From: Vitrella brassicaformis CCMP3155
Lineage: Eukaryota; Protista; Chromerida
Assembly (NCBI GenBank): GCA_001179505.1
Contig: CDMY01000449.1
Span: forward strand, 1-64,000
DNA length: 64,000 nt
Direction of reading: 5' to 3'
This document shows positions 13,731 to 19,747 of this stretch, piece by piece. A program made the position numbers and the translations under genes. Below the pieces are notes generated by a model. The model did no database searches, had not been told where the DNA came from, and was given only the letters and a program-made list of their open reading frames with translations. The stretch's first letter is position 1. Each line of letters begins with the position of its first letter.

Positions 13731-14220
13731 CGATCGGCCCGAGGGGTTTGGTGGACGCGCGTTGAGCAAACCATGACGTGGACCGCGCGCGACGGGCTGC
13801 TGTTGCTTGCCTGTGATTGCTTCGACGTTAGTGAGTGAGTGAGTGAGTATCAAGGTCCTTGTCCCTTCTGCTTGACTCATATGTGTTTATGTGGATACGT
13901 ACGATGTGACGTCAATTCGAGCTGTACTATGCGGATGTCCTCTTCCTTTGATGTGGCTTGCTTGTGTGTGTGATGGATGGGTCGCGACGAATGGATGGAT
14001 CCATCATTGCAATGGACGAACCAAAGGTGTCCGTGTCGTATTCCCAACACTCCACATGGAGCGAATGAGTCGTTATGGCCATCAGAGTGACAAAGGCAAA
14101 CACAAACCATCACAGAAAAGCCCACCACACACACGCTGCACCCGTCCACTCATCGCCGATGGACCGATCGATCAATCTGCACATCAAACAGCCGACAGCC
14201 GACCCGCCATGTGTCCTTGG

Positions 14221-17200
14221 TCACCCTGCAGCTGTTGCCTGCCTGTCTGTCTGTCTGCCTCCTTGGTGTGTTGGTTGGTCACGTACGTACGTACCGTTTT
14301 GGACGAATCTGTACTCGCATAGTGGGCACTCGTAGAGGACCGTCATGCCCTCATCCATCCCGCGACACTGACCGACCGACCAGTCAAGGAAGGACATCAC
14401 ATCACATTCATCCATCCATCAGTGCATCCGTCGATGCGTGGAATATATGCGCCTGTCTCTGTGTGTGTGTGTGTGTGTCTGCATACGCACCTGTTTGGTG
14501 GCGAATCGCATGCGGGGATGGCCGCACCTCGGGCACTCCTCACAGATCTGACCCACACACAACACAACACAACACAACACAGCACAACACAACACACGGT
14601 GCAGCGCATCAGTCCCTCCCTCCCCTGCCTCCCTCTTTGCTCTCTGTGCCACTTCCCCAGATGGCTTGCTTACGTATCTGTATTGTTCGTATTTGTCGTC
14701 GATGATGAATGGGTGTGAGAGTATGGGGTAGGAGAGGCCTCTGCAGAGCGTCACGGGGCAGGCCGGGTGGCCCCACTCGCGCCACCTCCTCCAGTACTCG
14801 GGCATGTACATCCACTCCTCCTCGATTACGTGAGGCGCACACGTCACCGACTGCTGACCCCAATACTCGTCAACCTACACACACACACACACACACACCA
14901 ATCCATCCATCCATCCATGTGTCTGTCTGTCTGTCTGTCTGTTGTACTGTGGTTCTTTCTCTACCTCTGGAGGGGCGTCGCGCATCTGTGCGCGGCCCCG
15001 GTCCTTCTCGTCGTTGACCAGAAAGTCGGTTTGGGCCTTGACGTGCTGCCGCCCCCCACCGGTGCCCTTCTTCTTCCGCTCCCCCTCCTCCTTGTAAAAA
15101 CGCGGGTAACTCGCACGCTGCGTCCGCCTCTGCCGCCTCACAGGCCTCCCCCCGCCCACCTCCTCTGTGTCGGCCATGTGTCCGTCCAGCTCACGCAGGA
15201 CCTTCCTCTGTGCCATGGCAGTGAAGGCGCCCGTCCTGAAGTACTCATTGCGGCGGACGGCGTACTCTGCCTTGGAGATCTTGGGTGGGTAGTCGGGGCT
15301 GTAGGTGGGGCCCTTGAACCGCTCCCCCCGCCACTTGTGCACGTCGGGGTGCTGCCCGTCGACGGTGGCATAAATGGGGCCCGGGTTGGTCACCACGTGG
15401 TAGGCCGTCCTCGGCCGAGGAGGGATGAACTTGGGCTTGTCGTCGTCCTCGGGCGGCTGCCGGGCGGGGTCCAGGTCAGGGTGAGGCAGGTCATCCAGCG
15501 GGTCGTCAAACGGCACGCCCACCACCTTGCCCCACAGAGGGTGGTGCTTCACGCTTTCTGGATTGGCCTTCTTGCGCCGCTGGAACTTGGTCATGCTCTT
15601 GAGGTGCGCTGGGGTCTCGTTCTTCTTCCGCTCGGCCGTGTCTTTCTCCCCCTGGTCCCAGCGCCACTGGTAGCCGCTGTTCCAGGCCATCTGCCAGGGC
15701 AGCCAGCTGCCGGCGTACCCATTGCAGTCGTCGTATCCTTTGCACGTCTGCACGCCGCTATAGAGGTCCCGCTCGGTTAGTGCCTTGTCCTCCTTCTCAC
15801 TCAGCGACTGCCGCACCGTCACGCGCGTGTTCTGCTTGAACTGCAGCAGGTCCTCGGTCGTGTAGGCGGTGCCGGGGTAGCCTGTGATGATCTGCCGGTC
15901 CTTGGGCAGCTTGCGGTCGGAGGGAGGGGGCGGAAGGGGCACCAGGTCGTCGGCGTATGGGCTCGGGTCGAACCCCCGCTCCCGGGCGTCGCCCTTGACC
16001 ACACTGGCGGTCCTCTCCATCTTGCGGCGAAAGTTCTGGTTGTCCACGTACCGCCGCTGCACCTCAGCCTTGTCGCCGTGCACCGCCCAAGGGCCCCTCC
16101 ACTCGTCCCTGTGCCACCGCGGCTTCCCCACCTTATTCTCGTACTTTTGACCGTCGATGGCCACCAGTCCGGCGCAGTACTGTGTGGGGCGCTTGACGCC
16201 GCGCTTGGCGGTGGGCGGGTTGGGTGGGATGAACTCGTAGTCGCTGATGTCGTCGGGCGATGAGTGCTCCTGACAGGGGACGAACAAGTCGCCGCCGTAG
16301 CCGTGTTTGGTGATGAGGGCCAGCTGGTCGGGCGGGCCGTCCTTGAAGACGTACTTGGCCACGCTCGGACTCATGCAGTGACGCTGGATGTCCTCCTCCT
16401 GGCCCCGCTGCTGATGGTCCAACTCGTCCAGCTCTTCCTTCTGCTCGCCCTCGCCCGCACCCTCACCCTCTTGCTGCTGCTCTGCCGTCTCGACTTCGCC
16501 CGCGGCCTCTGCAGGCTCGGGAGCAGCCATCTGCCGCTGGTCCTCGACGCTCGAATCCTCCTTTGTGGCCTCCCGCACAGCAGCGTCGAGCATCTCGTCG
16601 GTAAGGATGGGGAGACCCTCGAGCGAGACCTCTTCACTGCCCTCCTCTTGCTTGACCACAGGCATCTCAGGCACCTCAGGCACCTCAGGGGCGGGTGCAG
16701 GAGTAGCAGCTGCTGCTGGTGCAGCGGGAGCAGCCGACTGTGGTGGTTGCTGGGGCGGTGGTGGTGGCTGCTGTGGCGGCCAGGGGCCTGCCGGTGGCTG
16801 GGATGGCTCTGATGGTTGTTGGGGTGGCTGGGCAGGCTGCTGCAGGGGCTGGGGAGGCAGTGGCAAAAGTGACGGGCCAGCAGGTGGCTGTGGGTGGGGC
16901 TGGGGCTGCTCGCCCTCCTCCATGGGCTCTTGCTTGATGACTGGTGGTTGCTGGGGCGGTGGCTGCTGGCCCTCTTGCAGGAGGTAGTGCATCCAGCCCT
17001 TCTGGGGGTCGAAGCCCTCCTCCAGACTCGTGAGCAGACTCTCGCTCATCGTCGGCCAGATCTGCACCTCCTCGGGCATGGGCTGCGCAGCCCCCTCCCC
17101 GCTATCGCCCTCGGGCGGCTCGGACGACGAACTGCTGCTACCGCTGCTGCTGCTGCCACTGCTGCTGCTGCTGCTGCTGCTGCTCTCCTCTTCCTCCACA

Positions 17201-19098
17201 CCCCGGCCACTGCCGTTGCCACTGCCGAGTTCTTGGCCGTGCTCGGCCTGCTCCTGGCCCTCCTCTGCCCCTCCCTCTTGCTCGTCCTCCTCTTCCTGTT
17301 CGCTGCCCTGTTCCGCAGCCATGGCTGCCCTCTGTCGGTCTCTGTCGGCGAGTCTGTTGTCGATGCAGCCATAGGTGTCGCCGTACCAGCGTGGCATGTA
17401 GTCGGGGTAGGCGTAGCGGAACTTGTCCTTGAACCAGTCGCTCTTCTTCATCCTCCCCTCCTGCAGGAAGCTCTGCCGCACGACCTCCTCCTTCTCCTCG
17501 CCATCTTCGAAGAAGCCCAGCCCCGCCATCATGTGGTAGCACCAGCGGTTGGTGCCCTCGATGCAGCCGTCCATGTCCCACATGATCCGCAGAGGGTCGG
17601 CGTTGGTGTTGTAGGGTCTGGAGGGAGGGGGGTAGGGGGCGGGGAGGGGCGTGTTGCGCGGCGCCATGGGGCCCAGGTGGGGCCACACCACGCGGGTGGT
17701 CCGGCACACGTGGCACTCGTGCGACATGAAGTTCTGGGCGTTGCTGAGGGTGCACTTGAAGGGCTGGATGGAGCTGCCGCACCGACAACCTGACCAACCG
17801 ACGACACGCACACGCACACACAGGTGAATGGTGCATCCATCCCTTCCGTGTGTTTGTGTGTGAGTGTCCCCTCAGCTCACTCACATTGGTATTCCTTGTA
17901 GGCCTGTCGCCAGGAGCCCCAGTTGGCGAACTGGCAGAGCGGGTGGAGGAGCTTGACGGAGTTGTCATCCATCCTGCCGTCGAGCTCGAAGTCCGAGGGC
18001 AGCTCGTCCTCGTTTTTCTTCCTCTTCTTGCGCGCCCTCCTCTCGGCCTTCCACTCGCGGTCCTCCTCACTGTCGGTATTCCACGGATCTGTCATGGCGA
18101 TGTCGGTCTCGACGTCCTCGGCCCTGACCTTGGAGTCCCAGAAGGGCTCGTCGTGCATCTCGAAGTCGGAAAAGTCGGGCTCGCGCGATATGTCGCTCTG
18201 CACGTCGTTGGCCTCGTTGGTGTGGCCCGAGTCGGCGTTGGTGAAGCCGGCCTGCCCGGTGAACATGACCATGTCGTGGTACGGCATATCAGCGCCTGAT
18301 GGACAGACAGAGAGGGGAGAGGTGAGAGAAGGACGGCTGTGTGTGTGTGTGTGTGTGTGGTGAGCACTTACAGGCGTATGCGCCTTCAGGGAATGACCAG
18401 TAGGAGTCGTTGTGAGTGCTGAACCAGTCGACCATCTCGGGGTACCATTCCGGGTTCCAGTAGTCCATCTCCCTCTTGCCGTCCGTACGAGTGTCCACGT
18501 AGCTCCTGATGCACGTCCAGGCGTACTCGTAGATGCACCGCCAGTGCTGGTGCCACTGCTCGATCATCCGGGGGTCCATGAACCCCACGCCCGTGCAGCG
18601 CGCCGGCTGGCAGAGCTTCTTGTCGATGAAGATCTTCTTAAGCCACTTGGTGCGCTCCATGCGCTTGGCCATCATCCTCTCGTACTCCTCCTTGACCTTG
18701 GGCAGCCGGGCCATCATCTGGTCGGTCTTGTCGCGCTTGGGGCGGTAGAGCAGGAAGCAGAGCTCCTCCCACAGCCCGTGGATGGCGTACGGCGTCCGCT
18801 CGTGGCCGCCCGGCTTGGTGTCGTCCCAGTACTCGTCGTAGAGGTCCTGGATCCACCCCGGCCGCACCCCGTAGTGCTTGAAGTTCTTGCGGAAGATGTG
18901 ACGCAGCACCTTGTCCCGCTCGAACTCACCCAGGTGCTTGACGCGCCACTCGCTCCACATCAGAGTGCCGTCCTCGTACTTGCCAAACATGTCACTCGTC
19001 GTGTCCATGCAGCCCCGGTCACCCTTGGGCGGCAGAGGCAGCCACTTGGGCCAGTCGTAACGACCCGTCTCGTAGTAGTAGAACTCCTGAGTCGTCAT
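14221..19098 (-). CDS. ~1430-aa protein with C-terminal RPA12/TFIIS-type zinc ribbon, a possible N-type ribbon and a long Q/P/E/S-rich insert
   Basis: Exons 19098-18372, 18295-17885, 17789-14965, 14874-14674, 14547-14491, 14367-14295 and 14225-14221 join in frame at canonical GT-AG sites (4299 nt). The end reads ICEECPRCGHPRMRFATKQCRGMDEGMTVLYECPLCEYRFVQNG*, matching the RPA12 C-ribbon pattern CPxCG...QxRSADEGxTVFYxCxxC. Confidence 0.7.
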
Positions 19099-19318
19099 GG
19101 TGCCGTGTGGAGGACGCACCGATGGTCAGGAGGCACCAAGGCAGATGAGATGAATGCGGACGGAGATGGATGCGATGGATCTGCCGAACTGACGGTAGAT
19201 CTGAATGGGCTAATGGTCAGTGAGTGCCCCGGTGGTCCCACAAGCGGAAAAAGAAGGGGGTGGAGAAGCTCTGGATCGCAGTGCGAGCTCAAACGAAGAG
19301 AAGTTGAAGAGCCGAAGA

Positions 19319-19491
19319 TCCGCACCAAAACCACACGCCTCGCCCGGCAGGTAAGACGCAGATCCACTGGCGACGGAAGCGCTTCATTTCGTCACCTCTC
19401 TGCCTTTCTCCATTCAGGCAGCTTCCTGCAGCAGACGTCCATCCAGGCGGCCTGCTCCTGAAAACCACAACCAACACGCATGCAGGTACCA
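19319..19491 (+). repeat. Dispersed repeat copy D (partial, 3' end of element)
   Basis: Aligns by eye with 22367-22523 and with the reverse complement of 36304-36479. Ends AACCACAACCAACACGC-ATGCAG|GTACC. Confidence 0.85.
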
Positions 19492-19747
19492 CCTTCCCAA
19501 ACACGAAAGACCTGTGGAGTGATTGGCGTCTTTCGTGGCGCTGCATGAGGTCCGGTGAGCGCTGCAGTGAGGTCAACAGACCCTCCTGACCATACGGATT
19601 TGCTAGACAATGCAGATCTGAGGCGGACTGTCGGAGGAGCGTAACTCATCGAGAGCGATAGCATAGACACGGAGGACACACCAGCTGCAGGTGAGATGGG
19701 GGCATTGACGTGAATGGGTTTGTTTCATTCATCGGGCAGGTTGGTGT

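What the first reader, a model, noticed from the sequence alone, without database searches (positions are those of the whole stretch)
14221..19098. Giant RPA12-like protein: Pol I cleavage-subunit ribbon at the end of a ~1430-aa polypeptide
Seen: canonical splice sites join the 2.8-kb exon in frame (CCAGAG|GT at 14965, AG|GTT at 14874) to exons encoding CPRCGH...DEGMTVLYECPLC, ending 7 residues after the last Cys as RPA12 does. A second CxxC...CxxC (YQCCRCGSS...HECHVC, spanning the 17885/17789 junction) lies ~1000 aa upstream and could be the N-terminal ribbon. Known: RPA12, RPB9 and RPC11 are ~110-125 aa two-ribbon proteins. Inference: either an RPA12 with a huge Q/P/E-rich insertion and a W/Y-rich N-extension, or a new protein that captured a transcript-cleavage module. 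It lies ~10 kb from an rDNA unit.
Basis: partly seen in the sequence, partly recalled or inferred. Interest (0 to 1): 0.8.

Follow-up and report, generated by a model that had tools for sequence, protein, structure and literature searches.

The report
Giant RPA12 gene of Vitrella
This is a real, spliced seven-exon gene for a 1432-residue protein that ends in the zinc ribbon of the RNA polymerase I cleavage subunit RPA12. It is the only RPA12-like gene in this alga's assembly, but both the protein model and its odd size are already in public databases and in a 2025 review.

Summary
On the minus strand, seven GT-AG exons (19098 to 14172) encode 1432 aa. Spliced transcript contigs from three studies carry the disputed 14965/14874 junction and link 2.2 kb of the long exon to the ribbon exons.

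There are two corrections:
- A sixth intron (14294-14177) follows the ribbon, so the stop is at 14174-14172, not 14221.
- The protein ends 8 residues, not 7, after the last Cys.

The last ~50 residues are an RPA12-type ribbon:
- Pfam PF01096 scores 47.5 bits.
- The best solved relatives are S. pombe, yeast and human RPA12.
- All 11 invariant columns of an RPA12 profile are kept, including the D-E-G hairpin.
- That profile finds no other RPA12 locus in the 72.7-Mb assembly. RPB9, RPC11 and TFIIS genes are separate.

Residues 860-1356 have no relative among 1.84 billion cluster representatives. Residues 1-460 have none by word search, and neither part has a paralogue in the genome.

The upstream CxxC...CxxC (380-408) is not supported as the N-terminal ribbon (-4.5 bits; hhalign 1%).

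This is Vbra_96 (UniProt A0A0G4FJQ8). PMC12235521 already lists it as the RPA12 orthologue with the largest extension. Another reader of this scan noted the same stretch (s1-221686). Verdict: real and validated here, but already known.

The parts
19099..19348 (-). 5' UTR (at least). The transcript contig stops where a dispersed high-depth repeat begins.
   Evidence: X5 contig 7 reaches 19348. Depth jumps from ~60 to 450-1000 at 19272-19650.
18372..19098 (-). Exon 1: ATG at 19098, residues 1-242 plus the first base of Cys243. Aromatic-rich (W/Y/F), no known domain.
   Evidence: Junction in contigs. Pfam gave nothing significant.
17885..18295 (-). Exon 2: residues 243-380 (acidic/basic stretch). 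It ends in a split Cys380 codon.
14965..17789 (-). Exon 3: residues 380-1321, one open 2.8-kb exon.
   Evidence: Contigs cover 17787-17200 and 17129-14963. Only 17130-17199 (a Ser-run repeat) is not bridged.
17704..17885 (-). Candidate Zn motif C380/C381-x-C383 ... C405-x2-C408, interrupted by intron 2 (17884-17790).
   Evidence: The sequence is there. Homology to the RPA12/RPB9 N-ribbon is not supported.
16408..17307 (-). Low-complexity P/Q/E/S/G/A-rich region, residues 541-840. Probably disordered.
   Evidence: These six residues make up 67-90% of each 60-residue window, 230 of 300 (77%) overall, with almost no aromatics or Cys.
14674..14874 (-). Exon 4: residues 1322-1388, W/Y-rich. It contains C1333-x2-H1336 and C1360-x4-C1365, and its last ~15 residues align with the RPA12 linker.
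   Evidence: The AF2 model is of low confidence here.
14491..14547 (-). Exon 5: residues 1389-1407, the first half of the TFIIS-type ribbon (CPRC knuckle, C1393/C1396).
   Evidence: 17.7 bits against PF01096 positions 2-19. 26.2 bits against the RPA12 profile.
14295..14367 (-). Exon 6: residues 1408-1431 plus the first base of Asp1432. It holds the catalytic-type hairpin R-G-M-D1412-E1413-G (14355-14350) and the second knuckle C1421/C1424.
   Evidence: PF01096 at 27.5 bits. Best PDB match is S. pombe RPA12, E 3.5e-6. 37.1 bits against the RPA12 profile.
13977..14176 (-). Exon 7: the last two bases of the Asp1432 codon, stop TGA at 14174-14172, then the 3' UTR (to at least 13977).
   Evidence: Contig pieces 14177-13977/14026/14089 are joined to 14296 in X1, X5 and X6. 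Codon check.

Best explanation
The locus is the single RPA12 (A12.2/POLR1H) gene of the window's organism. The matching public protein names that organism as Vitrella brassicaformis CCMP3155, gene Vbra_96.

Seven exons give one mRNA and a 1432-residue protein. Its last ~50 residues form the RPA12 C-terminal zinc ribbon.

Inferred mechanism: as in yeast and human Pol I, this ribbon reaches the active site through the polymerase pore, and its Asp-Glu hairpin (D1412-E1413) stimulates cleavage of backtracked rRNA.

The preceding ~1380 residues are lineage-specific sequence with no detectable relatives. They comprise an aromatic-rich N-terminal part, a 300-residue low-complexity middle and a basic, aromatic part.

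Inferred position and role of this part: it stays outside the polymerase core. It would have to supply the anchoring to the lobe that the canonical N-terminal ribbon normally gives. It may also take over work of the A49/A34.5 subcomplex, which is not detectable in this genome.
For: Shown:
- The gene model is confirmed exon by exon against the public model P0001.
- Spliced contigs from three studies carry all six junctions, including 14965/14874.
- PF01096 scores 47.5 bits.
- In a PDB sequence search, RPA12 of S. pombe (1.4e-12), S. cerevisiae (8e-9) and human (2.6e-8) rank ahead of RPC10 (1.6e-5) and RPB9 (>0.05).
- In an exhaustive HMMER search of 1.84 billion representatives, all 300 non-self hits (E <= 1e-3) touch only residues 1357-1432. 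They are short proteins ending in the same ribbon, and the named ones are RPA12.
- Their profile matches solved RPA12 chains full-length at 5e-36 to 3.5e-23, against about 3e-11 for RPC10.
- All 11 invariant columns of that profile are kept.
- The AF2 ribbon has pLDDT 84-96, and its best Foldseek hits are Pol I chain I of yeast and human.
- The RPA12 profile finds only this locus plus the RPC11 gene in the genome. RPB9, RPC11, TFIIS and a second TFIIS-like gene are separate loci.
- PMC12235521 assigns Vbra_96 to RPA12 and reports no RPA49/RPA34 in any queried species except Tetrahymena; its wording there is 'apicomplexan species', though the set includes Vitrella. PF06870 and PF08208 find nothing here.

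Inferred: the cleavage mechanism, Pol I association, and any role of the extension.
Against: - No RPB9-type N-terminal ribbon is detectable. In yeast that domain holds A12.2 on the polymerase.
- No contig bridges 17130-17199. Contigs cannot show transcript starts, so a shorter 3' isoform is not excluded.
- Association with Pol I is untested.
- The searches for A49/A34.5 had no positive control, and six-frame searches lose sensitivity on split exons.
- The N-terminal 460 residues were tested for relatives only by word search, Atlas, Pfam and PDB, not by the exhaustive search.
Confidence: 0.78

Rival explanations
1. The functional RPA12 is a short product. An internal start (for example Met1342 or Met1344 in exon 4, or an internal promoter) or proteolytic processing yields a ~90-110-residue protein. 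The 1432-residue reading frame would then be a fusion or read-through form of little functional weight.
For: - Exons 4-7 encode 111 residues, the size of a normal RPA12.
- In a MAFFT alignment, C1333-x2-H1336 falls under the second knuckle of the N-ribbon. The C1333-to-C1393 spacing (60 residues) matches the canonical 54-64.
- 3' contigs are deeper than 5' contigs in X6 and X1, but contig depth cannot rank parts of a gene.
Against: - Every contig that holds exon 4 also holds exon 3 spliced to it in frame, in three studies.
- Exon 4 has no start codon at its beginning and lacks the first CxxC knuckle.
- The public gene model and the review treat it as one protein.
Confidence: 0.1
2. It is a new, non-Pol I protein that captured an RPA12 cleavage ribbon by gene fusion. 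The true RPA12 has been lost or lies in unassembled sequence.
For: - The N-ribbon needed for Pol I binding in yeast is not detectable.
- The first 1356 residues are orphan.
Against: - RPA12 is near-universal in eukaryotes (established knowledge, not tested here), and this is the only RPA12-type locus in the 72.7-Mb assembly.
- The catalytic hairpin and all invariant residues are intact, which argues for continued selection for the Pol I function.
- Apicomplexan and Chromera RPA12 orthologues also carry extensions of up to ~300 residues (lengths 221-442 aa) and show only PF01096.
Confidence: 0.1
3. It is an artefact: a mis-assembly or a chimeric gene model.
For: None found. The only gap in contig support is a 70-nt Ser-codon repeat inside an open frame.
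Against: - Independent spliced contigs from three studies agree with the genome and with the public model to the base.
- All six introns are canonical GT-AG.
Confidence: 0.02

Closest known systems
RPA12 / A12.2 / POLR1H (Pol I cleavage subunit; PDB 7aoc_I, 4c2m_I, 7ob9_I)
   Same: - A C-terminal TFIIS-type ribbon at the very end of the chain.
- Motif Q-x-R-x-x-D-E-G-x-T-V-x-Y-x-C-x-x-C with all invariant residues kept.
- About 15 residues of linker upstream also align.
   Different: - 1432 residues against 119-126 in the solved chains.
- No detectable N-terminal RPB9-type ribbon.
- The hairpin reads C-R-G-M-D-E-G instead of L-R-S-A-D-E-G.
Extended RPA12 orthologues of apicomplexans and Chromera (PF3D7_0407300, TGME49_250060, Cvel_23889; PMC12235521)
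   Same: - An N-terminal extension in front of a conserved C-ribbon.
- Only PF01096 is recognised.
- The organisms have no recognisable RPA49/RPA34.
   Different: - Those proteins are 221-442 residues; this one is 3-6 times longer.
- In the exhaustive search every non-self hit touches only the ribbon end, so no protein in that library shares the 860-1356 part. The listed top 150 are all 46-204 aa, so those 221-442-aa orthologues are not among the closest ribbons either.
TFIIS
   Same: A large protein whose C-terminal ribbon carries an acidic hairpin that enters the polymerase pore.
   Different: - TFIIS has a central TFIIS_M domain and a D-E-P hairpin.
- Vitrella has its own TFIIS at contig C244 and a TFIIS-like gene at C271.
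- TFIIS chains rank far below RPA12.
RPC11/RPC10 and RPB9
   Same: The same ribbon superfamily.
   Different: - Separate canonical two-ribbon genes exist at C384 (RPC11-like) and C850 (RPB9-like).
- They score lower against this ribbon.

Membership tests
RPA12 (A12.2/POLR1H) | C-terminal TFIIS-type zinc ribbon (CxxC...CxxC, PF01096) | tested here: met
   47.5 bits, E 1.6e-12, profile positions 2-38 of 39. AF2 pLDDT is 84-96 over the ribbon.
RPA12 (A12.2/POLR1H) | Acidic hairpin D-E followed by Gly (the RPA12 signature, against D-E-P in TFIIS/RPC11), plus the other invariant columns | tested here: met
   All 11 invariant columns of the 40-sequence profile A1 are kept: C1393, C1396, Q1407, R1409, D1412, E1413, G1414, T1416, Y1419, C1421, C1424.
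RPA12 (A12.2/POLR1H) | Closer to RPA12 than to RPC11, RPB9 or TFIIS, and the best RPA12-like locus of its own genome | tested here: met
   PDB ranking. The own-genome search with the RPA12 profile gives this locus 37.1 + 26.2 bits, RPC11 32.7 bits, and nothing else.
RPA12 (A12.2/POLR1H) | N-terminal RPB9-type zinc ribbon (PF02150) that anchors the subunit on the lobe | tested here: not met
   - No PF02150 match in the protein or at the locus.
- The only CxxC...CxxC (380-408) scores -4.5 bits and 1% hhalign probability.
- Per PMC12235521, the apicomplexan, Chromera and Tetrahymena orthologues also list only PF01096.
RPA12 (A12.2/POLR1H) | Small size (~110-130 aa) | tested here: not met
   1432 aa.
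RPA12 (A12.2/POLR1H) | Physical subunit of Pol I with RNA-cleavage-stimulating activity | not testable with these tools
   Needs purification of Vitrella Pol I or localisation.
TFIIS | Central TFIIS_M domain and a D-E-P hairpin | tested here: not met
   No TFIIS_M match. The hairpin is D-E-G. A separate TFIIS gene exists.

The most novel reading that the evidence does not exclude
The ~1380-residue orphan part is a built-in replacement for missing Pol I parts. It would anchor the cleavage ribbon without a canonical N-ribbon and do the work of the undetectable A49/A34.5 (TFIIF/TFIIE-like) subcomplex. It would have arisen when an unrelated upstream gene fused onto an RPA12 whose first zinc knuckle was lost; exons 4-7 look like an RPA12 lacking its first ~15-25 residues.
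Probability: 0.15. Interest if true: 0.6.

Novelty: already known. Interest (0 to 1): 0.3.

Why it matters
RPA12 is normally one of the smallest and most constant Pol I subunits. A 165-kDa version whose canonical anchoring domain is undetectable bears on two questions: how the cleavage ribbon is held on the enzyme, and how alveolates manage without recognisable A49/A34.5.

The protein and its size are already in UniProt and in a 2025 review. This check adds four things:
- Transcript-level proof that the gene model is real.
- The corrected 3' end.
- Evidence that the extension is orphan and single-copy.
- Evidence that no canonical RPA12 hides elsewhere in the assembly.

Tried and rejected
- Exons were searched by reference. 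The full protein was used only as the public record P0001 returned, then checked against the window exon by exon.
- Word searches found only the protein itself or nothing: residues 860-1321, the 111-residue C-terminus and residues 1-460.
- ESM Atlas: nothing for 1-460. For 841-1432 there were only ribbon-driven leads at 0.82.
- Pfam on every exon and on four parts gave only PF01096.
- PDB sequence searches of 1-380, 365-430, 841-1325 and 1318-1392 gave only chance-level hits. These were alphavirus E2 at E ~0.01, a U-box at E 0.8 and RNase H2B at E 0.7.
- AF2 of residues 1-470 without an alignment was useless, with mean pLDDT 34.8.
- AF2 of 1310-1432 with an RPA12 alignment was confident only for the ribbon. 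Exon 4 stays at pLDDT 39-53, so this gives no evidence that it folds as an N-ribbon.
- Self-comparison found no internal repeats.
- Own-genome searches found no paralogues of either half of the extension.
- Weak PF01096/PF02150 hits elsewhere in the genome were read. C581 is a SET/MYND-like protein and C271 is a TFIIS-like paralogue. The others are not RPA12. C759 stays unresolved at 17.8 bits.
- The Toxoplasma crosslinking preprint has nothing on RPA12.
Full report
**What is in the sequence**

The window is GC-rich eukaryotic DNA. It carries an rRNA unit (28S 29132-32436, 5.8S, 18S 33021-34797), a 5S gene and a U6 gene, all on the minus strand.

Between 19098 and 14172, also on the minus strand, lie seven exons:
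- E1 19098-18372
- E2 18295-17885
- E3 17789-14965
- E4 14874-14674
- E5 14547-14491
- E6 14367-14295
- E7 from 14176

They are separated by six GT..AG introns of 76-126 nt. The 17885/17789 junction makes the split Cys codon inside YQC|CRCGSS.

**Transcript evidence**

Logan contigs of three runs from three studies (X5, X6, X1) are spliced.
- One contig type runs 17129 (or 15077)..14965 | 14874..14674 | exon 5 | 14367..14295 | 14176..~14000.
- The other runs 19348..18372 | 18295..17885 | 17789..17200.
- Run X7 retains the introns and serves as an unspliced control.

The ribbon exons are not in a separate short gene, and the long ORF does not end unspliced at 14875.

Two caveats remain:
- No contig bridges 17130-17199, a Ser-codon repeat inside the open exon.
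- Contigs cannot show transcript starts.

The contigs also correct the 3' end. Exon 6 splices at 14295|14176 (G+AT = Asp) and the stop is TGA at 14174-14172. The protein therefore ends ...CPLCEYRFVQND, 8 residues after the last Cys. The coordinate 14221 is only the stop of the unspliced frame.

I did not build a joined model. [quoted passage not shown] Every exon translated by reference, and every split codon, matches it.

**What the ribbon is**
- Exon 6 alone reaches PF01096 (27.5 bits). The whole ribbon reaches 47.5 bits.
- Against solved structures, the last 58 residues match S. pombe RPA12 (E 1.4e-12, residues 60-118 of 119), yeast RPA12 (8e-9) and human RPA12 (2.6e-8). These rank ahead of RPC10 (1.6e-5) and RPB9 (>0.05). 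The 24 residues of exon 6 alone give the same order.
- An exhaustive HMMER search of 1.84 billion cluster representatives with residues 860-1432 gave 301 hits at E <= 1e-3, one of them the protein itself. Every other hit touches only residues 1357-1432. The 150 best listed are proteins of 46-204 aa whose own C-terminus is the ribbon. The named ones are RPA12.
- A profile of 40 of these hits matches solved RPA12 chains over their full length at 5e-36 to 3.5e-23, against about 3e-11 for RPC10, 8e-8 for TFIIS and 8e-7 or weaker for RPB9.
- All 11 invariant columns of that profile are kept in the Vitrella protein, including R1409, D1412, E1413 and G1414. D-E-G is the RPA12 form of the hairpin. Both RPC10 chains aligned read D-E-P there, and so do Vitrella's own TFIIS and RPC11-like genes.
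- An AF2 model built with an RPA12 alignment is confident over the ribbon (pLDDT 84-96). Its best Foldseek hits are chain I of yeast and human Pol I.

**Is there another RPA12?**

Six-frame searches of the 72.7-Mb assembly with PF01096 and PF02150 find:
- a canonical two-ribbon RPC11-like gene at C384,
- an RPB9-like gene at C850,
- a TFIIS at C244,
- a TFIIS-like paralogue at C271,
- a SET/MYND-like protein at C581.

The RPA12 profile finds only the present locus (37.1 and 26.2 bits in exons 6 and 5) and, more weakly, the RPC11 gene at 32.7 bits. So this is the only RPA12-type gene in the assembly.

**The rest of the protein**
- Residues 1-540 are aromatic-rich, 541-840 are P/Q/E/S/G/A-rich low complexity, and 841-1388 are basic and aromatic.
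- Nothing beyond the ribbon has a Pfam family, a solved relative by sequence, or a paralogue in the genome.
- There is no relative in the protein collections. Residues 860-1356 were tested exhaustively. Residues 1-460 were tested by word search and Atlas only.
- Single-sequence AF2 of residues 1-470 failed.

**The 'second ribbon'**

The motif C380/C381-x-C383...C405-x2-C408 exists. It is the only place where an RPA12 profile can lay its N-ribbon columns. However, the score is -4.5 bits, hhalign gives 1% probability, PF02150 is silent, and the PDB hits are chance.

A second, equally unsupported candidate appears in a MAFFT alignment. C1333-x2-H1336 in exon 4 falls under the second knuckle of the N-ribbon, and its distance to the C-ribbon (60 residues) is the canonical one. 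AF2 gives no confident fold there.

So the data cannot decide between an insertion between two ribbons and an N-terminal extension with the N-ribbon lost or halved.

**Comparison with what is known**

The review PMC12235521 (Nucleic Acids Res 2025) lists Vbra_96 (UniProt A0A0G4FJQ8, 1432 aa, PF01096 only) in its RPA12 table. It makes these points:
- Chromera has 390 aa, T. gondii 348 and P. falciparum 320/370.
- No RPA49/RPA34 was found in the queried species except Tetrahymena (the review's wording is 'apicomplexan species', though the set includes Chromera and Vitrella).
- The authors speculate that RPA12 extensions may compensate for that loss.

Here, PF06870 and PF08208 also find nothing in the genome, though without a positive control.

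The finding is therefore already known at the level of prediction. This check adds transcript validation, the corrected 3' end, the orphan and single-copy status of the extension, and the absence of a separate RPA12.

**Mechanism**

Shown: there is one spliced message, and its protein ends in an intact RPA12-type ribbon.

Inferred from the yeast and human Pol I structures and biochemistry:
- The ribbon enters the pore, and D1412/E1413 promote cleavage of backtracked rRNA.
- The large remainder sits outside the core. It must provide or replace the lobe anchor.

Rivals are a short isoform or processed product (0.10), a non-Pol I protein with a captured module (0.10), and an artefact (0.02).

**rDNA neighbourhood**

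The full 18S occurs only once in the assembly, in this window. The gene therefore lies 10 kb from the only assembled nuclear rDNA unit. This is a post-hoc coincidence that I could not test further.

Noticed in passing
window 19272-19650: A dispersed element lies just upstream of the gene's 5' UTR. Its depth is 450-1000 in transcript contigs, against about 10-68 for this gene's own spliced contigs in X5 and X6. A joint 19350>19427 with CTTCCT between the two sides occurs in three spliced runs. The gene's own contig stops at 19348, at the element's edge. This fits the earlier notes of a portable 5' module.
   Followed up: partly
window 28393-35712; G000 whole genome: The full-length 18S is found only once in the 72.7-Mb assembly. 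It is in this window, in a unit that also carries 5S and U6 on the same strand. Other hits are fragments of 54-115 nt. This could be a single unit or a collapsed array.
   Followed up: partly
L010 (G000:C271:47013-47135, minus strand): A second TFIIS-like gene. It has a TFIIS central-domain-like exon followed by a ribbon, CPNC...x27...CTEC. Its hairpin reads E-M-E-E-T instead of S-A-D-E-P, so it may be a cleavage-inactive paralogue.
   Followed up: partly
L006 (G000:C759:64482-64544, minus strand): An isolated open frame reads like the second half of a TFIIS-type ribbon (Q-M-R-R-A-E-E-P...V-V-C-V-P-C, 17.8 bits, E 0.3). No first knuckle is visible nearby. It could be chance, a pseudogene or a split exon.
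   Followed up: partly
window 14368-14964: Introns 3, 4 and 5 are 90, 126 and 123 nt, all multiples of three. Intron 4 has no in-frame stop, so retaining it would keep the frame. The introns are full of (GT)n, (GACA)n and (GGAT)n microsatellites.
   Followed up: no
window 13850 and 17482: A joint skipping 3631 nt (side only 21 letters) appears in all four runs, including the unspliced one. It lies in simple repeats and is most likely a repeat artefact, not a splice.
   Followed up: no
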